From: Ophelia neglecta
Lineage: Eukaryota
Direction: 5' to 3'
Length of the DNA: 64,000 nucleotides
Assembly: GCA_965285935.1 (NCBI GenBank)
Contig: OZ260663.1
Coordinates: forward strand, 87,544,001-87,608,000
Below are positions 1 through 44,439 of this stretch, piece after piece. Every line of letters begins with the position of its first letter. The stretch's first letter is position 1. Made by a program: the position numbers and the translations under genes. The notes beneath the pieces were generated by a model that searched no databases, was not told where the DNA came from, and saw only the letters and a program-made list of their open reading frames with translations.

Positions 1-268
1 TGGTGAAGCCTGGGATGTCACCCTTTCACTCAGGTTTGTCTTAATGTAACATTGGATTTGTAATCACGCCTATCACCTTAGAACTCCTTACGTCAATAGT
101 ACACCAGTAAACACATTCATCCACCAATGAGGTAGACATTTTCACAACAGATGTTTCATCTGAGAATATCTCAAGTTGGCCTTATTAATAAAAATAGCAC
201 CTGATTAGTCTCATTAAGAATCCATATATTTCCGGAATCAGACGCTCCTATTTTTTATAAACTAATCA

Positions 269-340
269 AATTACCTACCGCTAATAAAGCCTTATAACTG
301 CAGAATTGTACTTACCTAAAACGAAAGAAAAGATCATTAG
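269..340 (-). other. Recursive splice site (junction 316|315) with 37- or 41-nt RS-exon (315-279 or 315-275)
   Basis: Minus strand reads CTAATgatcttttctttcgttttAG|GTAAGTAcaattctGCAGTTataaggctttattagcg|GTAG|GTAATT. A branch-point-like CTAAT lies at 340-336. Confidence 0.72.
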
Positions 341-17816: not shown

Positions 17817-19054
17817 TCAATTTTCTGTTGTTACATTTTATTGCGCTATGAGGTGATATAATACTCTACCATTGACATTATTCCTTTAGCTTGTGATTTT
17901 TGAGGCAACCCATCTATTGTCTAAGACTTAAAGGAGAGCTTGGTCCAGCATAGACTATCTTAGGCCCTACTCCACCATTGTCCTACACTGACCACTGACT
18001 TGATCTTTTATATTCTTTGATTTTATTTCTAAATTTCATTTCCAATGCTTACTATTTTAATATTATTATTAATAATTTGGTTAAAATCCTGTTTACAGTG
18101 GAGATACTAGGGATTGATATCTGAAGGGATGCAGCCCACGGTTTTTGTTTATTTCGTACCAATTTAATGGACAATTCTAAACCAATACTTGCCTTTCTCG
18201 GCGTGTTTATATTTTTTTTTTCTAAATTTATCTGGTTGTATTGCTATTATAATTATAACAGCATCAACATATCAGGAATTGAAGCAATCACGACTTACGC
18301 AGTGGGTTTTTACCACGAGGACCATTTGCTTTAGTTGCGTGAGTCCTATACTGGTTCATACAAGTGTCCATTGCCATGATTTGATTATAAAATAAACAAA
18401 AACTTATTCCATGAATACATTAACCAATTTAATTGGTACAGTTTGAGCAAGGCTGTTGTTATTTATAGCCAAAATCTGATAAAATTGGCACATAAATAGA
18501 CTGGAAACAGCTAAGGGAGACTAGAAAAACACTTTCGTGTTTCCTCTCAATACCTAATTTAATCATAAATAATAGTCTGTAAATCGGGCCCTAGGAGAAA
18601 CATACAGTCACATATCCTAATTATTGTGGGGCACATTATCGCCGGCATGGTTAGGACTAGATTTTTTTATCTATAGGCAATGTGGCGTGTTGTGGTCATA
18701 CATGGTAAAGCCTTCATTAAGCTTTTTATTTATTTAAAGAAATGCATCTGTTCTGATTCAGCTCAGTAGACACAAAATATTCTTGTTTAATGCAAACAAC
18801 AGAGTGAATGACGGCAAATAAAGCAAAAAAACATATAAATTAGAAACTAAGCCGGCGAAAAATTCAATGACATTACATTGCCAAGCCCAATAAACAAATT
18901 TTGCTATGTGTCATTCCAAAATCGTCACGACTGCCTTTGTATTGTACACGTAAAAAGAAAGGTGTGTTGCCACGATAAGGAGAGCTTGATAAACTGAAGT
19001 CAAAGTGTCTCCCGACATGCTCTATCTGATGCTGATCTAAGAATGAGCAAAGTA

Positions 19055-19125
19055 ACTCACCAACTTTAAACCAAACGGAAACTGCAAAATGTTACTTACC
19101 TGAAATAGAAACAACAAAAGTATAA
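19055..19125 (-). other. Recursive splice site (junction 19100|19099) with 39-nt RS-exon 19099-19061
   Basis: Minus strand reads cttttgttgtttctatttcAG|GTAAGTAacattttGCAGTTtccgtttggtttaaagttg|GTGAGT. Confidence 0.75.
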
Positions 19126-20387
19126 GTATATGGTATTTGGAAACAATATTTCAATTTATAGTAACAAGCACGGTATAAAGTATTTATATTTAACTATTGA
19201 TGAGTATGTTGATTGATATATATAACAATACATTATCATGATCTGAGTAAACAGGATAACAATTTGGCCAAGTTGATACCAAACATGAAATAATTTATGG
19301 AGGGTCCAACGCATCGCTGTTCATCTACAGGAAATAGAAAAAGATATGTTTGGACTTTTGTTGACACATTGAAATGCCTAAAGTGAGTAATGCCTGGTTT
19401 TAAAAGATTGATACAAAAACAAAATCAAGGGACAATCCACAAATGATACTCAATACCAAGGAGAAATATAGTTGTTTCCTCAAACAGTACAATACTGACA
19501 CAACAAAAATATTTCATTGTTTAAAATTAACTATTTTCTCTGGGGTTTGGGGACGTCTGGTTTGCGCAGGAGGTAAGTTATGCCAATGCTTTTCTAGTCT
19601 TGTTACGACAAAGACTCTCCGACGTTTATATTCAAGACTCTTCCCTGGAGGCCCAAATTCGAAGGTCAGTTTTTCTTTCTTTCACAACTCCTGTTTATTC
19701 TCGACATTTAGAAATGGTTGGGGAGTATAACATGCAATTGCTTTAATATTGTTCGAACGCATACCAATAAATTAGCAGTGGCGACTGCTAGACGGCATTA
19801 ACCGGCCCCACACAACGTAACGAAATGAAGTGCCCTCTGTGCAATGTTTTCCTAAATATGCCCTAAATTTAGTATGCTACGATCTGCATATTTACGGTAT
19901 CATCGGGTCCGTCCAATTATACCTAAATTCACCAATATCATGTACACGACAAATGAACACGTGTCTTATACTCTACCAATCTAAGTCTCGCTGTACGATT
20001 ATTATAAATAATGACATTGTGTGTTTGTATTCTTTTTAATATGATAGCCTTACTAAATTGTTTTGATGTGTAGTTCACCAATTTTTTGTTTGTTTTAGCT
20101 GTAGGTCAGTTGTTTGTCTAATTTTGTCCAGACTTGATGAAAGTTCTTTAATGTATTCACTGGTGGCGGTGTGCACTTTTTATCTCTATCTAATGTCTTT
20201 GGCCTATGGCCTTATCGTTTATGCAATAAAACATAATTTTGTTGATCTGTTAGTCTTTTACCTAAATATGAAAAACAACACAATAAATTTATGCTTGTTA
20301 AATATTGGTTGACTTGGATATAACTGCTTTTATTGTATGTGAATTTGTCACCGAGACCTCCTGGCGGACAATTTAAGGTGTGTAATA

Positions 20388-20561
20388 CAATGGAACCTGA
20401 CTTAAGAACCAACTCTATAATCAGACCATCTGTCAATTCACACCATAAATATGAGGACCATGCTGTATACTTTCAATGTCAAATAACCTAAACAGACCAC
20501 CTCCTACATCAGACCAACATTTTGCAGTCCTTTTGGTGGTATTAATTCACAGGTTTCATTG
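20388..20561. mobile_element. 174-bp MITE, Tc1/mariner/pogo type
   Basis: Imperfect TIRs CAATGGAACCTG ... CAGGTTTCATTG, flanked by TA on both sides (20386-87, 20562-63), with internal repeated AGACCA motifs. Confidence 0.78.
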
Positions 20562-23389
20562 TACTAGAACACTAGAAATTATACAGCGGATTTCAATTTG
20601 AAAACTTGACATACCGACGCTTTCAACCACAAAGGAAACGAAACATATTACTGTTACAGGAACTTAAAATAATATTTCTCCATTTTACTGACAAAATAGG
20701 AAATAATAAGAGGTTTACAGCGATAAAAACATCAGAATGCTTGAGTCCTTCGATTTCCACATGAGGGCGCTTAAATTAAAGGCAACATTGAGCATTGGAT
20801 TAGCTACTAGACAGAACAGACGCTTATTGAGTAGACTTGAAAAATACCAAACAATTGGATTATCCTAATCTAATGACGACCACTAGGTATCTAGCACATC
20901 ATACAAAATTCGGAATACAATGGCGAGTAATGTCTATCCAAACCTCCAAAGATGACTAGAACATTGCTCTGTCATCGTGATAATATAATATAGCGTGCAA
21001 AATTGGCTTATTATTTACAGAATAAAACCCAATACCTTATGTACATTATTGATATTCATGTTTTGTTTTATTTCACGACATAACGTTTGTACTTATTGGC
21101 TCCGATAAAGAGGACTCCTACAAAACAAGTAATGTCTACCCATTTTGGCCTTTTATAATAGAAATTCCAGATAAACTGGAAAAGGCTAAAGTGGATACCT
21201 AATGACAGTGTCTAAATAAATGATTATATGACTATCCGTTTTACATTGCGTAAAATGAGAGGTTTGTAGAGGGCATCTTTGCAACGATAACTAACTTTTC
21301 TCTGTATGGATAGTGTAATAACTACACTTGGTTAATATATTTTACCGGCGTCATCGGACTATAAAACAACACATAGGGAAATACGAGGAATTAATGACGT
21401 TGCATATTGACACATGGCTATCGAACAGTATTTTCCCCTTTCTATCATTTGGACCATGATCTTTGGTCCTTGGTTTCAAACTATATAATGAATATATTTA
21501 TGATCACTCCTCATTCAAACGACAGAAAATCGTGACTTAAATCTTCCGGCAAGCCTAATTAAATTATTATATTATTGATTTGAGAATGCTGTTAATTATT
21601 TTTGTTCAAGTTAAAAAAGTGCATGTTTGAAACTATTAAAAATACAGTTCTTTTCGTTTATATGGCCTACGGAGTTTATACACGCTTATGGCAGGACTGT
21701 ATTTATATCGTCAGACTGGTACATTTACAGGAAGCCAGTTAATTGGTTCTATTTCGCATCCTCCGGCAGCTGGCGGGTACACGGATATATATTTAAAAAA
21801 GAGTGACCTTATCAGGGTTCACTAGCTAATATCGTAACCTCTGTCATTAGAGGACGCCTGACGTTCTCAATTTTATTCAAAGACTGTAACCAGAGTTAAA
21901 TAATTTCAATTTTAATATTAATTAATTTTATCGCCCTTTGCATACTGATTGCAAAATCCCAAAACATGAATGTCCGTATTTGTGCCACACAAACCACATA
22001 TTGATATCTCAAAGAATATGCATAGCTTCCCTAGGTTATCTGGACCCTAAAGCACGTTGGTATTCGTAATTCACCCATTCATAAGATTGTAAAGACAGGG
22101 GATCCTGCAATTTATTGCCGGAAACCAATATCAGATTAAAGAGCAAACCGCGCTGGTTTCTAAAAGATCCAATGGAACCGACTTTCACTCAGAGTCCTCC
22201 GAAAATACCAATTTTCTCTAAGTCAATGGCATAGTATAAAAGAGAGAGAATAACTCATGATTGAGTTAGGCGGTCATTAAAGCAAAGTCCTATAATATAA
22301 CACGACCAAAAATTGGGAAAGCAAAAAAAAAACCCTTAATCTGTCTCCTCAATTACCTTACAACTGTCAAATTGAAATGCCAAGTTACCCTTTTATTGTC
22401 TTCAAGTGACACTCAATATCTATTCTACATGACTGTCTTATTTGCGAACATGTTAAGTAGAATGTTGCACGGTAAAGCGTGCATCTCGTTTTGTTAAGAC
22501 TACCTCTAACCACTATGCGTGTGAACAATCCATTAGCCGGCTGACGAACCCCACAAATCTATGGTCAATGATCTCCTAATTGTCTAGTCTGAGACTCTAA
22601 TGGAAATGAACTATTGCGGAATGAATAGGCTCGGAAACTGCAATATTGCAGGCAACGGCAAATGGCATTCACTTGTTAAAGGAACTAACGGACGCCAGCT
22701 TACTACGTACAGAGCACAATAAATATGACGTTTTACCCAACTGTGACTAATTGATGTAGCTTAAACACTCAACTACAGGGAAAATCCCTTTCGAGCTTTT
22801 AAGTACATTATATTTTCAGAGTGTTTTGGCTATACATACAGGATACTTGGATCACCGAAGCCGCTAATGCGTCACCGTTATAGTGCAATAACGGCCCTAG
22901 TGATAGATTCGGACACTATTAAGTTGCTGTAGTCAAACACATCATAAGAATGTCACCTGCTCTGACTTTTTATGTTGCTTGGTTCGCAAACAAGCTACCA
23001 TGAGAAAACGGCAGCGGATACTTCTCTGATAAACGCAATTATGTTGTAAAGAATGATTCCATTAACTCAAGCTAACGTACAGAAACGCCATTAAACGCAG
23101 GCTCACGAGGCTATCATATACAACTTTACATTACTACTTTCAATTGACTTACACGCTAGCATGAAGCTAAGGCGAATCATATAAACAATAAAAGTACCTG
23201 TATAGGGAATTTACGTGGAGTGTTAAGATGATCTATGTCTAGTATATAATTAATTCAATGTTCTAATCCCATATGATTATAACAAGTTTTCATTGCCAAG
23301 ATTAAAATGTAGCGAATCTACTTTATTATTTACCACCAATTCAACTTCCTCTGGCTATACAAGCTAATCAACTGCAAACAGGTGGTTAA

Positions 23390-35850: not shown

Positions 35851-36529
35851 CTGAAGGATAATTTATTTCCATAGACCAACAACGTCTTTTCGAGACCTTC
35901 CCAAATCTGTTGTCACTTACTTTCGCTATTTCTCACATGTTTCGAGATATTGGCCATTTTACGCCTGTGGGTGAGACAAGGCGCTTGGCAAATACCGCGG
36001 ATTGAGAGATAGCATAAAATGTGGTTCCAAGTATCATCTCTTGTTCTTGTATAACCAACACCTTTTTGCAGAAGAAAGGTCAGAATACAGACGTTGTAAT
36101 CAAAATGTCGCCTTTTGCAACCAATATTATATTACGAATGACTAATATGAACCATAACCTTTGTGTTCAATGCCTTTGTTATAATTATATCTAATAATCT
36201 AGTGGTAAATCTATTGTTATCTTTTAAGAATAGCGCGGAAGAATCCGAGGTTATCAATGTAATTCACCTTCTATCAAGAAGAAAGTAACCACAAAGAACC
36301 AAGGATTATTACGGAATGTAAATCGTTCCCCAATAGATCATTATATTTCCGTTATGATGCTTTCCGTACGTGTGCATAAAACAAATCATCTCTGTTCTAT
36401 AAAGACCCCGCTGTCCTGAGATGCTTCAGATGCCTTTCTATCGAAAAGCACTGTCCCAGCCCCGGGATACTCCCAGCTGACCCGAGGCGTAACCGATATA
36501 AAACTGATATAAAAACAAAGCGCAAATCA

Positions 36530-36600
36530 ACTTACCCTCCCTTTAGAACAAGAAACTGCGAAAGATGTACTTACCTGAAAAGAGGAAAAGCACAAATGAT
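36530..36600 (-). other. Recursive splice site (junction 36575|36574) with 39-nt RS-exon 36574-36536
   Basis: Minus strand reads tttgtgcttttcctcttttcAG|GTAAGTAcatctttcGCAGTTtcttgttctaaagggagg|GTAAGT. Confidence 0.75.
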
Positions 36601-42500: not shown

Positions 42501-44439
42501 TTGTACGGTGGTGCCTAAGGTTTCCCATATAACGTGAAAACGTGTTGAAAAAAGCTGACTCATTGTATTCAACGGTGTGTACGATGCGCTATCTCTGTGG
42601 TTCTGCCTGCGGCATGGACTGAGACCGACATGTCACATGGGTTTGTTTTAGGTTATCCTAGTATCATACTGCATCGCCGAGCAGCATAGTAAGCGCTGAA
42701 GGGAGTCAGCCTAAATATGTTATTAACTACGTGGCCTACATGCAAACATTTGCAGAGAAGTGAAAACGCGATGAAATATATATTATGATGAAACGCAGAA
42801 ATGGCAGTGCGAATGCATTATACTCGCGTCAAATAAATATATATGTTTGCTGGCAATGCCGTTACGTATAATCAGTAACATGTATCAGAATATTTGCAAT
42901 ATTTGCAAGGTTCGTGCAAATAACTGTTAATTGCGCCCTTGTAACCATCGATAAAATAGTTATAATGTGATAGTGAGTTAAGTAGATCCGGTATGATTGC
43001 TTTGTGATACTACTTTTCGTCCGGTAACTTATTCTCAGCAATCAGATTAATAAAGTACACTACCATACAGCATCTGGAAATCTTAAAAGTCCACTGGTAT
43101 CAATTTTAATGCATATACATTCTCTGTCGTGTTGCTAACTGTCTACCGCTAAACTATGAACGATCGGCTGGGGTCATCTCTTAATGTATCCTGTATTTGT
43201 CTCTGGGCGGAGTCTCTATAATCTCTGACGGAATGCAGGGTTACTGACGCTTCATCCTGTAACCGGTGGTGAGGTCTTACTCACACATGAATAGGTCATA
43301 AGCCGCTAGGGTACGAAAGGCTCCTCCCATAGAATAAATCATGAACCGAGTGTTATGTGTATAATGGAAAACGTATCTGGACCTATTGATGCGATGCAGC
43401 TTTCGCCGCATTATATGTTTAAGGTAATACATATTCTTGCTATGAGTATGTCCATGACATAATTCAATTTGTATAACCTCATATCAAACTTACCTTAAAG
43501 ATGTTTTGCCGATACTATAAACGGGATAAAATGACGTAAGCAATAATAGGAAGCGTAAATTAGGTACACATGAAAAGCATCATCAGTAGAAAACGATGGC
43601 AACATTTTTATCTATTTGTAATATGCTAGAAAATCAGAAGCTCTGCCTAATAAGCATTCGTCCTGCAATAATTTGACCAAACAGAAGTTGAAAATTAACC
43701 TGACTTTGTCTAATGAAATGTGCGTACAACAATACTATTCGGTTTTTCCAATGTTGTATTAAATGCACAAAATGTATCGTTGCATTATTATGGCACAAGC
43801 ATTCAAATTCATTCATTGTAAGCACATACATCTCACTCTTACAAGATTATAATAAACCTTTGCTTAATGCAATTATCAGCCAATAAGAGGCATTATATCT
43901 TTACCATTCGGTACCAGCCAATAAGGGCCGCGGCGTCTTTGACATGTAGTTCGAGCCAATATGACTCAATGCGTTATCAAAATTGATGCCCCAACTGATG
44001 AAAATTGACATTTAAAATGCATTCCATATCCAACTGTGTTCTCATTGACTAGAAAAATAGTTTGGACGTGAGCAGCAGACCATCAATAAACTGAAACGCC
44101 GGCAATGTAAAATTTGGTGTTATTACTCGCAATCCGAGTTGGAACACCAAAACATGCCAAGAAAAACATGTCAATAATCTATTACTTGTTGAACAGTGAA
44201 CGGAATCACGAAGGAAGCAGCCTTGGAAAGAAAATTGTTTACAGCAGATTGTAAATGCCATTCACAAATAAAACCAGTTTGTTACATAACCTTTTGGCTA
44301 GCAGGTCGTTGTGTTACTGGGCAAGGATGTTTGTGAGCATACAAATTTTGTTCGAAGCGGAACTTTTATAGATACACACTATTCTCAATCGCTCATTTCC
44401 TTGTGTACACCCGGCCTCCATTTTTTGCCCTCAGCATAT

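What the first reader, a model, noticed from the sequence alone, without database searches (positions are those of the whole stretch)
19055..19125. Shared positional GCAGTT motif inside all three RS-exons
Seen: the 5' ends align as GTAAGTAcaattctGCAGTT (315), GTAAGTAacattttGCAGTT (19099) and GTAAGTAcatctttcGCAGTT (36574). GCAGTT starts at +15, +15 and +16, each time after a short pyrimidine run, while the wider flanks look unrelated. The splice consensus does not explain this, and I know of no such element in described RS-exons. Inference: it may be a lineage-specific recursive-splicing element (a protein or snRNA site, or a decoy acceptor that steers donor choice). It could also be a nested acceptor giving 19-23 nt microexons, or a trace of one ancestral module that seeded all three sites.
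Basis: partly seen in the sequence, partly recalled or inferred. Interest (0 to 1): 0.88.

Follow-up and report, generated by a model that had tools for sequence, protein, structure and literature searches.

The report
Shared block in four recursive-splice exons
Four look-alike "stepping-stone" splice sites, which probably let an invertebrate remove a 110,000-base intron piece by piece, all carry the same short extra sequence; it is real but found only in this one intron, so it is most likely an inherited helper signal for recognising the tiny hidden exons and not a new general splicing code.

Summary
On the minus strand, three perfect acceptor-plus-donor sites (Y-tract-YAG|GTAAGTA) lie at 36574, 19099 and 315. 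GCAGTT starts at +16, +15 and +15. A shuffle test gives P about 1e-4.

I found a fourth site 20.4 kb beyond the window start. It has the same build but reads GCAACTT. All four have a second donor 39-41 nt downstream, so they are recursive-splice (RS) exon modules.

Likeness among the four is limited to about -40..+75. It is concentrated in +8..+22 and at the second donor. Positions +23..+40 and the flanks are at background. The RS2 stretch is single copy.

Genome-wide, GCAGTT shows no positional excess after AG|GTAAGTA. Six RS-exon-type modules in other genes lack it. It is therefore private to this locus, not a lineage-wide RS element.

The host intron is about 110 kb. It runs from a likely non-coding exon 1 to a conserved ATG exon just upstream of the PKA catalytic-subunit gene.

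Best reading: the four are copies of one ancestral RS-exon design, and the block has been kept as an exon-definition element. It looks like an acceptor and matches the SC35-type enhancer consensus UGCNGYY in two modules.

No RNA data or related genomes were available, so the function is inferred.

The parts
36536..36574 (-). RS1 RS-exon, 39 nt, starting GTAAGTA
   Evidence: acceptor-donor junction at 36575/36574; second donor follows at 36535
36554..36559 (-). GCAGTT of RS1 (+16..+21), preceded by C (CGCAGTT)
36575..36600 (-). RS1 acceptor: pyrimidine tract and CAG
   Evidence: 15 of 17 pyrimidines
36529..36535 (-). RS1 second donor GTAAGTT
19061..19099 (-). RS2 RS-exon, 39 nt
   Evidence: the 151 nt around it are single copy in the genome
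19080..19085 (-). GCAGTT of RS2 (+15..+20); with the preceding T it reads TGCAGTT = UGCNGYY
19100..19125 (-). RS2 acceptor: pyrimidine tract and CAG
19054..19060 (-). RS2 second donor GTGAGTT
275..315 (-). RS3 RS-exon, 41 nt
296..301 (-). GCAGTT of RS3 (+15..+20); TGCAGTT = UGCNGYY
316..340 (-). RS3 acceptor: pyrimidine tract and TAG
268..274 (-). RS3 second donor GTAATTT (the weakest of the four)
43487..43493 (-). donor of the presumed exon 1 (AAG|GTAAGTT); start of the roughly 110 kb intron
   Evidence: the only other AG|GTAAGT on this strand in the window. Its role is inferred; there is no RNA evidence
43878..43960 (-). three inverted CCAAT boxes (ATTGGCT), likely promoter of exon 1
   Evidence: read directly from the sequence; promoter function is inferred

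Best explanation
GCAGTT is the core of a roughly 15-nt block (+8..+22: CA, a 5-7 nt pyrimidine run, GCA(G/A), TT). Only the four recursive-splice modules of one roughly 110 kb first intron share it.

Each module has a branch-point region, a pyrimidine tract, YAG|GTAAGTA, the block, about 18 variable nt, and a second donor. This gives a hidden RS-exon of 39-41 nt.

I read the four as descendants of one ancestral RS-exon module. Selection has kept the block, while the rest of the exon and the flanks have decayed.

Inferred mechanism: the block is an exon-definition element. It lies just 3' of the U1 footprint on the ratchet donor. There it offers a pyrimidine-run-plus-CAG and SC35/SRSF2-type (UGCNGYY) binding surface. 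That surface would help U2AF and SR proteins, together with U1 on the second donor, recognise a very short exon. Exon 1 is then joined to the ratchet AG. After that, the stronger regenerated donor (AAG|GTAAGTA, 9 contiguous pairs to this genome's U1) outcompetes the second donor, and the RS-exon is skipped.

Shown: the anatomy, the locus-private nature of the block, and that it exceeds chance. Inferred: common descent, selection, the binding factors, and recursive splicing itself.
For: Four modules share one architecture and RS-exon lengths of 39/39/41/40 nt. RS-exon-type modules in other genes measure about 34-66 nt.

The shared 6-mer has P about 9e-5. The independently found fourth module repeats TTCTGCA at the same offset.

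Likeness is patchy. At +8..+22 the mean local score is 7.2 among the four against 4.0 to 14 other RS-like sites. At +41..+75 it is 8.2 against 6.1. At +23..+40 (4.5 against 4.4) and +76..+200 (9.5 against 9.3) it is at background. The only in-register BLAST matches span about 60-70 nt.

It is not a repeat and not a genome-wide feature.

RS2 and RS3 read TGCAGTT at +14, which matches UGCNGYY. By shuffling, P(2 or more of 4) = 0.005. [quoted passage not shown]

The two perfect matches sit in the modules with the weaker tracts or second donor. The module with the strongest signals (RS4) has lost the G.

Drosophila work shows that internal RS-exon sequence can decide RS-exon fate, and that donor competition suppresses cryptic RS-exons (PMC8605326).

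U1 here starts ATACTTACCTG, so the ratchet donors pair better than the second donors.

Host context: exon 2 is a conserved ATG exon with an acceptor about 30 nt before the ATG, both here and in a related contig.
Against: There is no RNA evidence at all. Recursive splicing, exon 1 and RS-exon skipping all rest on sequence.

Four sequences cannot separate descent from convergence.

I chose the UGCNGYY match after seeing the motif, and the consensus comes from a vertebrate SELEX study. RS1 has C for U, and RS4 has the inactivating A.

The positions that never vary are G-C-A. An SR site would be expected to keep the G at position 5, and an acceptor the AG.

Six other RS-exon-type modules do without any such motif.

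Most cryptic RS-exons in flies are poorly conserved.

No orthologous intron could be compared.
Confidence: 0.45

Rival explanations
1. Working nested or decoy acceptor. The pyrimidine run plus GCAG is a real second 3' splice signal 18-19 nt after the ratchet AG.

It could be used to give 20-23 nt micro-exons. Or it could act as in Sex-lethal exon 3, where U2AF binds the downstream tract and AG during exon definition while the upstream AG is used in catalysis.
For: Three of four modules have Y-run-GCAG. That resembles true acceptors of the neighbouring gene, such as T-run-GCAG|TG at PKA-C exon 2.

The U1 footprint on AG|GTAAGTA overlaps the ratchet AG (U1 5' end), so a displaced U2AF site makes sense.

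Precedent: two closely spaced AGs matter for Sxl exon 3 skipping (PMC1431707, citing Penalva 2001 and Lallena 2002). Details of that mechanism are from my own knowledge.
Against: RS4 has GCAAC and no AG. GCA, not AG, is the invariant part.

The tract is short, and it is preceded by the purine-rich GTAAGTA.

The upstream tracts are already strong.

TT after the AG is conserved but is not part of an acceptor.

Other RS-exon modules show no excess of such an AG (counted by eye).
Confidence: 0.15
2. Neutral relic. The four modules descend from one duplication series, and the block is leftover identity with no function of its own.
For: The modules have equal RS-exon lengths and the same element order. 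RS4 already shows decay (GCAACTT). The motif is absent from all other RS-like sites.
Against: The adjacent 18 nt of the same exon and all flanks are at background likeness, while +8..+22 keeps 8 invariant columns of about 15. Uniform neutral decay would not leave so sharp a boundary.
Confidence: 0.15
3. Convergence without shared ancestry. Each site evolved the same element on its own, because this transcript needs a particular factor or pairing partner. One example would be a docking sequence that brings the ratchet sites to exon 1.
For: The block is private to one transcript. The 3' end of exon 1 resembles the block of RS1, with the shared 8-mer ACATCTTT before an AG.
Against: No conserved fold involves the block (-3.7 kcal/mol, elsewhere in the module). 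No convincing common complementary site was found in the 110 kb. The best one is mid-intron and is explained by the CTGCAG palindrome.

Likeness between the exon 1 junction and the modules is not significant overall (P = 0.26 and 0.07).

Equal exon lengths are explained more simply by descent.
Confidence: 0.1
4. A lineage-wide recursive-splicing signal or an snRNA-pairing site.
For: Only the three-fold (now partly four-fold) recurrence itself supports it.
Against: There is no positional excess genome-wide. The other hits lack RS architecture. Six other RS-exon modules lack the motif. U1 has no AACUGC outside a stem. RS-like sites are no commoner than their reversed controls in this genome.
Confidence: 0.03
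5. Chance, or the sites are not splice elements at all.
For: There are no transcripts. The motif was noticed after the fact.
Against: P is about 1e-4 for the motif.

Four perfect Y-tract-YAG|GTAAGTA sites lie on one strand within 57 kb. Each has a second donor at +39..+41. In this genome the stringent pattern occurs about 55 times in 1.5 Gb of strand.
Confidence: 0.05

Closest known systems
Cryptic RS-exons at Drosophila intronic ratchet points (Joseph et al.; PMC8605326)
   Same: Both have a juxtaposed acceptor and donor, and a downstream second donor that defines a short hidden exon. In both, the ratchet donor is stronger than the RS-exon donor, the sites lie in a very long intron, and there are several sites per intron.
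   Different: This is a different phylum (lophotrochozoan-type invertebrate), and there is no RNA proof. The four RS-exons have nearly one length and share an internal block, whereas fly cryptic RS-exons are reported as poorly conserved and of varied length.
Ubx micro-exons m1 and m2 (expressed RS-exons, 51 nt each; PMC8605326)
   Same: Both cases have several RS-exons of equal length in one gene. In Ubx, internal exon sequence was shown to control the outcome.
   Different: The Ubx exons are coding, included in mRNA and ultraconserved. The exons here lie in a 5' UTR intron and are probably always skipped.
SC35/SRSF2-dependent exonic enhancers, consensus UGCNGYY, e.g. tau exon 10 (PMC3152345)
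   Same: RS2 and RS3 read UGCAGUU, near the 5' end of a small exon. RS4 carries the G5-to-A change that inactivates the tau element.
   Different: The consensus was derived in vertebrates. Binding was not tested here. RS1 deviates at base 1. The match was found after seeing the motif.
AG-pyrimidine tract-AG arrangement of Sex-lethal exon 3 (Penalva 2001 and Lallena 2002, cited in PMC1431707)
   Same: Both have two AGs a short distance apart with a pyrimidine run between them. The upstream AG is the one ligated.
   Different: Here a full donor, GTAAGTA, sits between the two AGs. One of the four modules lacks the second AG. No SPF45, U2AF or SXL data exist.

Membership tests
Recursive splice site with RS-exon | [quoted passage not shown] | tested here: met
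   four sites with 14-15 of 17 pyrimidines and YAG|GTAAGTA
Recursive splice site with RS-exon | Downstream donor that defines a short cryptic exon | tested here: met
   G|GTAAGT, G|GTGAGT, G|GTAATT and G|GTAAGT at +40, +40, +42 and +41
Recursive splice site with RS-exon | Ratchet donor stronger than RS-exon donor | tested here: met
   Complementarity to this genome's U1 5' end: 9 contiguous pairs for AAG|GTAAGTA against 6-7 for the second donors (counted by hand)
Recursive splice site with RS-exon | Lies in a long intron, on the sense strand of a transcribed gene | tested here: inconclusive
   The promoter-like CCAAT boxes and donor at 43493, and the conserved ATG exon with its acceptor 110 kb downstream, fit. 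No RNA runs exist.
Recursive splice site with RS-exon | Recursive intermediates, lariats or a sawtooth read pattern | not testable with these tools
   no RNA run holds this sequence. One search used DNA contigs only.
SC35/SRSF2-type exonic enhancer (UGCNGYY) | Match to the consensus inside an exon | tested here: inconclusive
   perfect in RS2 and RS3 at +14. RS1 has C at base 1; RS4 has A at base 5. Background is 0.84 per kb.
SC35/SRSF2-type exonic enhancer (UGCNGYY) | SR-protein binding and enhancer activity | not testable with these tools
   Needs CLIP or EMSA and a minigene
Interspersed repeat or transposon-borne splice module | Many copies with homologous flanks | tested here: not met
   the only hit is to itself; no flank homology among the four sites; no further copies.
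Genome-wide RS-associated motif | Positional enrichment downstream of AG|GTAAGTA sites | tested here: not met
   12 hits (9 without ours), against 4 and 8 at shifted offsets; absent from other modules.

The most novel reading that the evidence does not exclude
Recursive-splice modules can multiply inside an intron as complete units of about 100 nt: acceptor, ratchet donor, private enhancer, second donor. As the intron grows, it would carry its own family of stepping stones tuned to one factor. Here that would be an SRSF2-like or U2AF-binding block placed just beyond the U1 footprint, in a lophotrochozoan PKA-C isoform transcript. This would be the first evidence of how ratchet points originate, and of a gene-specific control element inside cryptic RS-exons.
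Probability: 0.3. Interest if true: 0.6.

Novelty: new member of a known kind. Interest (0 to 1): 0.38.

Why it matters
Recursive splicing has been documented in flies and vertebrates. I did not find it described for molluscs or annelids in the one, non-specific literature search I ran, and how ratchet points arise is not settled.

This locus offers four ratchet points in one intron that look like copies of one design. They have a sharp contrast between a conserved 15-nt block and a decayed remainder. That makes a clean, small target for mutagenesis.

The experiment would ask whether a cryptic RS-exon needs its own enhancer or acceptor-like element, and whether RS modules spread by duplication.

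The locus also sits upstream of a PKA catalytic-subunit gene with several alternative N-terminal exons. Stepwise removal of the intron could therefore bear on isoform choice.

As it stands, this is a sequence-only inference at one locus. It is not a general rule.

Tried and rejected
- **RNA evidence.** Laying them confirmed the sequence but said nothing on splicing. There are no variants between 18629 and 20445, which is too long a clean stretch to single out the module.
- **Cross-species test.** None of the collections I could search by DNA holds related animal genomes. A metagenome scan with a module-wide pattern gave two GC-rich tandem repeats of bacterial type, which are chance matches.
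- **Exon 2 relatives.** A word-based protein search found nothing. The exhaustive search found two relatives on short metagenome contigs with no ratchet sites in reach.
- **Conserved fold.** None involves the block.
- **Common docking site in the 110 kb.** The best hit is explained by the CTGCAG palindrome, and my control was biased in favour of the real blocks.
- **Homology of the modules to the exon 1 junction.** Not significant overall, although the RS3 donor flank alone gave P = 0.0025.
- **U1 pairing.** No AACUGC outside a stem. The other snRNAs were not searched.
- **A similar 16-nt start on contig C36.** It is an ordinary donor without a second donor or homology.
- **Private likeness in other multi-site introns** (C8, C1, C12). 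Not seen beyond GTAAGTACC in C8.
- **100 kb upstream of the window.** The upstream end of the array is therefore known only from pattern searches.
- **Spliced PKA-C model.** This is why I could not look for the species' own gene annotation.

Full report
**1. What is there**

Each has a branch-point-like TAAT or TTAT, a pyrimidine tract (14-15 of 17 positions), then YAG|GTAAGTA. The G of GT lies at 36574, 19099 and 315.

They are the only pyrimidine-tract AG|GTAAGT sites in the window. The one other AG|GTAAGT on that strand, at 43493, has no tract and looks like an ordinary exon donor.

GCAGTT lies at 36554-36559, 19080-19085 and 296-301. That is +16, +15 and +15 from the G of GT, as stated. 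Each site also has a second donor, which gives hidden exons of 39, 39 and 41 nt.

**2. Beyond chance, and a fourth copy**

I shuffled the interior of each RS-exon while keeping its composition. A 6-mer shared by all three within one position appeared in 9e-5 of trials.

A genome-wide pattern search then turned up a fourth site on the same strand, 20.4 kb past the window start (C5:87523607). It has the same build: a strong tract, CAG|GTAAGTA, and a second donor at +41, so a 40-nt exon. From +11 to +17 it reads TTCTGCA, exactly as site 315 does. It then continues ACTT instead of GTT.

The recurrent unit is therefore wider than the hexamer. It consists of (A)CA, a 5-7 nt pyrimidine run, GCA, G (A in the fourth module), and TT. 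No further site of this kind lies in the 264 kb I assembled around the window.

**3. Where the likeness begins and ends**

BLAST of 6 kb around each site finds in-register matches of only about 25-70 nt across the junction and nothing collinear in the flanks.

I compared the four modules with 14 other RS-like sites of this genome:
- At +8..+22 the four are clearly more alike (mean local score 7.2 against 4.0).
- At +41..+75, the second-donor region, they are also more alike (8.2 against 6.1).
- At +23..+40 (4.5 against 4.4) and beyond +75 (9.5 against 9.3) they are at background.

The 151 nt around 19099 occur once in the genome. This excludes an interspersed repeat and a recent duplication. 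It also shows two conserved blocks separated by decayed sequence.

**4. Not a genome-wide signal**

AGGTAAGTA followed after 6-9 nt by GCAGTT occurs 12 times in 762 Mb. Three hits are these sites and four belong to one tandem repeat. The other five are single loci, none with the pyrimidine-tract, directly abutted acceptor-donor and second-donor build; one of them, C7:40760467, has an acceptor-like tract and AG 4 nt before the donor.

The same motif at offsets of 11-14 and 16-19 nt gives 4 and 8 hits. There is therefore no positional excess once this locus is set aside.

Six RS-exon-type modules in other genes have second donors at about +34 to +66, placed by eye. They are three at C8:80.34-80.43 Mb and one each at C1:21.72, C5:14.04 and C9:7.45 Mb. 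None has the motif.

Stringent RS-like patterns are themselves no commoner than their reversed controls in this genome. True ratchet points therefore seem to be few. Other pairs of nearby sites show no private likeness.

**5. The host transcript**

Three inverted CCAAT boxes lie at 43878-43960. About 400 nt downstream is AAG|GTAAGTT at 43493. Together they look like a promoter and a first exon. I find no open frame running through that donor, so the exon is probably non-coding.

On the same strand, 110.2 kb downstream, lies a 399-codon open stretch. An exhaustive protein search found two relatives, at 50% and 28% identity. Both start exactly at its Met (MCWVC...) and both stop being alike right after a DGI(H/Y) motif.

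In the related contigs an acceptor-like tract lies about 30 nt before the ATG in one, and a donor follows DGIY in the other. The same holds here. This is therefore a conserved ATG-bearing exon 2 fed by an upstream non-coding exon.

It ends in phase 1, as does the myristoylation exon (MGNAATAKKG) of the PKA catalytic-subunit gene 7.5 kb further on. PKA-C exon 2 accepts phase 1.

The intron with the four ratchet points is therefore most likely the first intron of a long-N-terminus PKA-C isoform. It is cut into 6.9, 17.5, 18.8, 20.7 and 46.4 kb pieces. This model is inferred.

**6. How it most likely works**

The sharp contrast between the block and the next 18 nt argues for selection, whether the four arose by duplication or not. 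The near-identical exon length and element order argue for duplication of one module.

The block begins where the U1 footprint on GTAAGTA ends. This genome's U1 starts ATACTTACCTG.

The block looks like a small acceptor: a pyrimidine run followed by CAG. In the modules at 19099 and 315 it reads UGCAGUU, a perfect match to UGCNGYY. [quoted passage not shown]

The two perfect copies sit in the modules with the weaker tract or second donor. The module with the strongest signals has the G-to-A form. That fits an auxiliary element, but with only four cases it is anecdotal.

Fly work shows that internal RS-exon sequence can decide RS-exon fate, and that a stronger ratchet donor keeps cryptic RS-exons out of mRNA (PMC8605326). 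Here the ratchet donors pair with U1 over 9 contiguous positions, against 6-7 for the second donors.

My preferred reading is an inherited exon-definition element for a very short RS-exon. I give it about 0.45.

**7. Rivals**

- **A truly used or decoy nested acceptor.** This would resemble the two-AG arrangement of Sxl exon 3 and remains possible. However, the fourth module has no AG, and the invariant letters are GCA, not AG.
- **A neutral relic.** This fits the loss in the fourth module but not the sharp boundary of conservation.
- **Convergence on a pairing partner.** I found no support in a consensus fold, in a scan of the whole intron for a common complementary site, or in likeness to the exon 1 junction. 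An ACATCTTT...AG stretch shared by the exon 1 end and the first module stays unexplained.
- **U1 pairing.** Excluded.

**8. Limits**

Everything about function rests on sequence at one locus with four copies. No transcript data and no related genome could be reached.

Earlier notes of this scan on the same window also called the RS-exons fixed-length, which I confirm. They also called them poison exons in the frame of exon 1. I doubt that, because exon 1 seems non-coding.

**9. Verdict**

The general interpretation is refuted, and the ancestral-module reading is favoured.

This is a new member of a known kind: RS-exon ratchet points, here in a lophotrochozoan-type genome. It has an unusual private conserved block that is worth a minigene test.

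Noticed in passing
G000:C5:87418973-87469740, minus strand (loci L020-L025): This is a PKA catalytic-subunit gene. It has a myristoylation exon (MGNAATAKKG), an exon 2 (AFLAQAKEDF), and three tandem alternative copies of the RDLKPEN exon at 87449229, 87448990 and 87447709. The copies look like mutually exclusive exons.
   Followed up: partly
G000:C5:87476086-87477243, minus strand (L019:2086-3243): This is a 376-codon ATG exon starting MCWVC (a cysteine-rich start that could be a lipid anchor). It is conserved in two metagenome contigs (P0001, P0002). It ends in phase 1 like the myristoylation exon, so it may encode a long alternative N-terminus of PKA-C. It has no Pfam match.
   Followed up: partly
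G000:C5:87497237-87503700 (L016-L017): A satellite of about 6.5 kb with short tandem units lies inside the last segment of the recursive intron. It reads as long open frames (LGVGWF...).
   Followed up: no
window 20270-20610: A very high-copy repeat. Summed contig depth is several thousand times that of its neighbours, with many variant junctions.
   Followed up: no
G000:C8:80339954, 80398436, 80431649, minus strand (L033-L035): A second multi-site recursive-splice candidate. Three Y-tract-YAG|GTAAGTACC sites lie within 92 kb, with second donors at about +57, +34 and +66. They share only the CC at +8/+9.
   Followed up: partly
G000:C7:12180667-12184923; C8:83012420-83013058; C7:40838203-40838577: Satellites whose unit contains a full acceptor-donor or donor motif (Y-tract-AG|GTAAGTAAC...). 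Their periods are about 41, 55 and 96 nt. They inflate pattern counts for RS-like sites.
   Followed up: no
whole genome G000: Y6-N-YAG|GTAAGTA and TTTYAG|GTAAGTA are not more frequent than the same patterns read backwards (107 against 109 hits, and 62 against 80). Ratchet-type sites are therefore rare here, and most single hits may be chance.
   Followed up: partly
window 43494-43504 and 36556-36568, minus strand: The last 11 nt of the presumed exon 1 (ACATCTTTAAG) resemble the block of the first module (ACATCTTTCGCAG). The RS3 second-donor flank also aligns with the exon 1 donor flank over 28 nt (P = 0.0025 alone, not significant across all four).
   Followed up: partly
G000:C7:40760467, minus strand (L007): An acceptor-like tract and AG are followed 4 nt later by GTAAGTA, with CTGCAGTT at +15..+22. 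This is a possible 4-nt-exon ratchet site carrying the same hexamer. It is a single case.
   Followed up: no
G000:C5:105.66-106.54 Mb: A large cluster of U1 snRNA genes (dozens of full-length copies about 1.36 kb apart), plus scattered copies on C1, C2 and C8.
   Followed up: no
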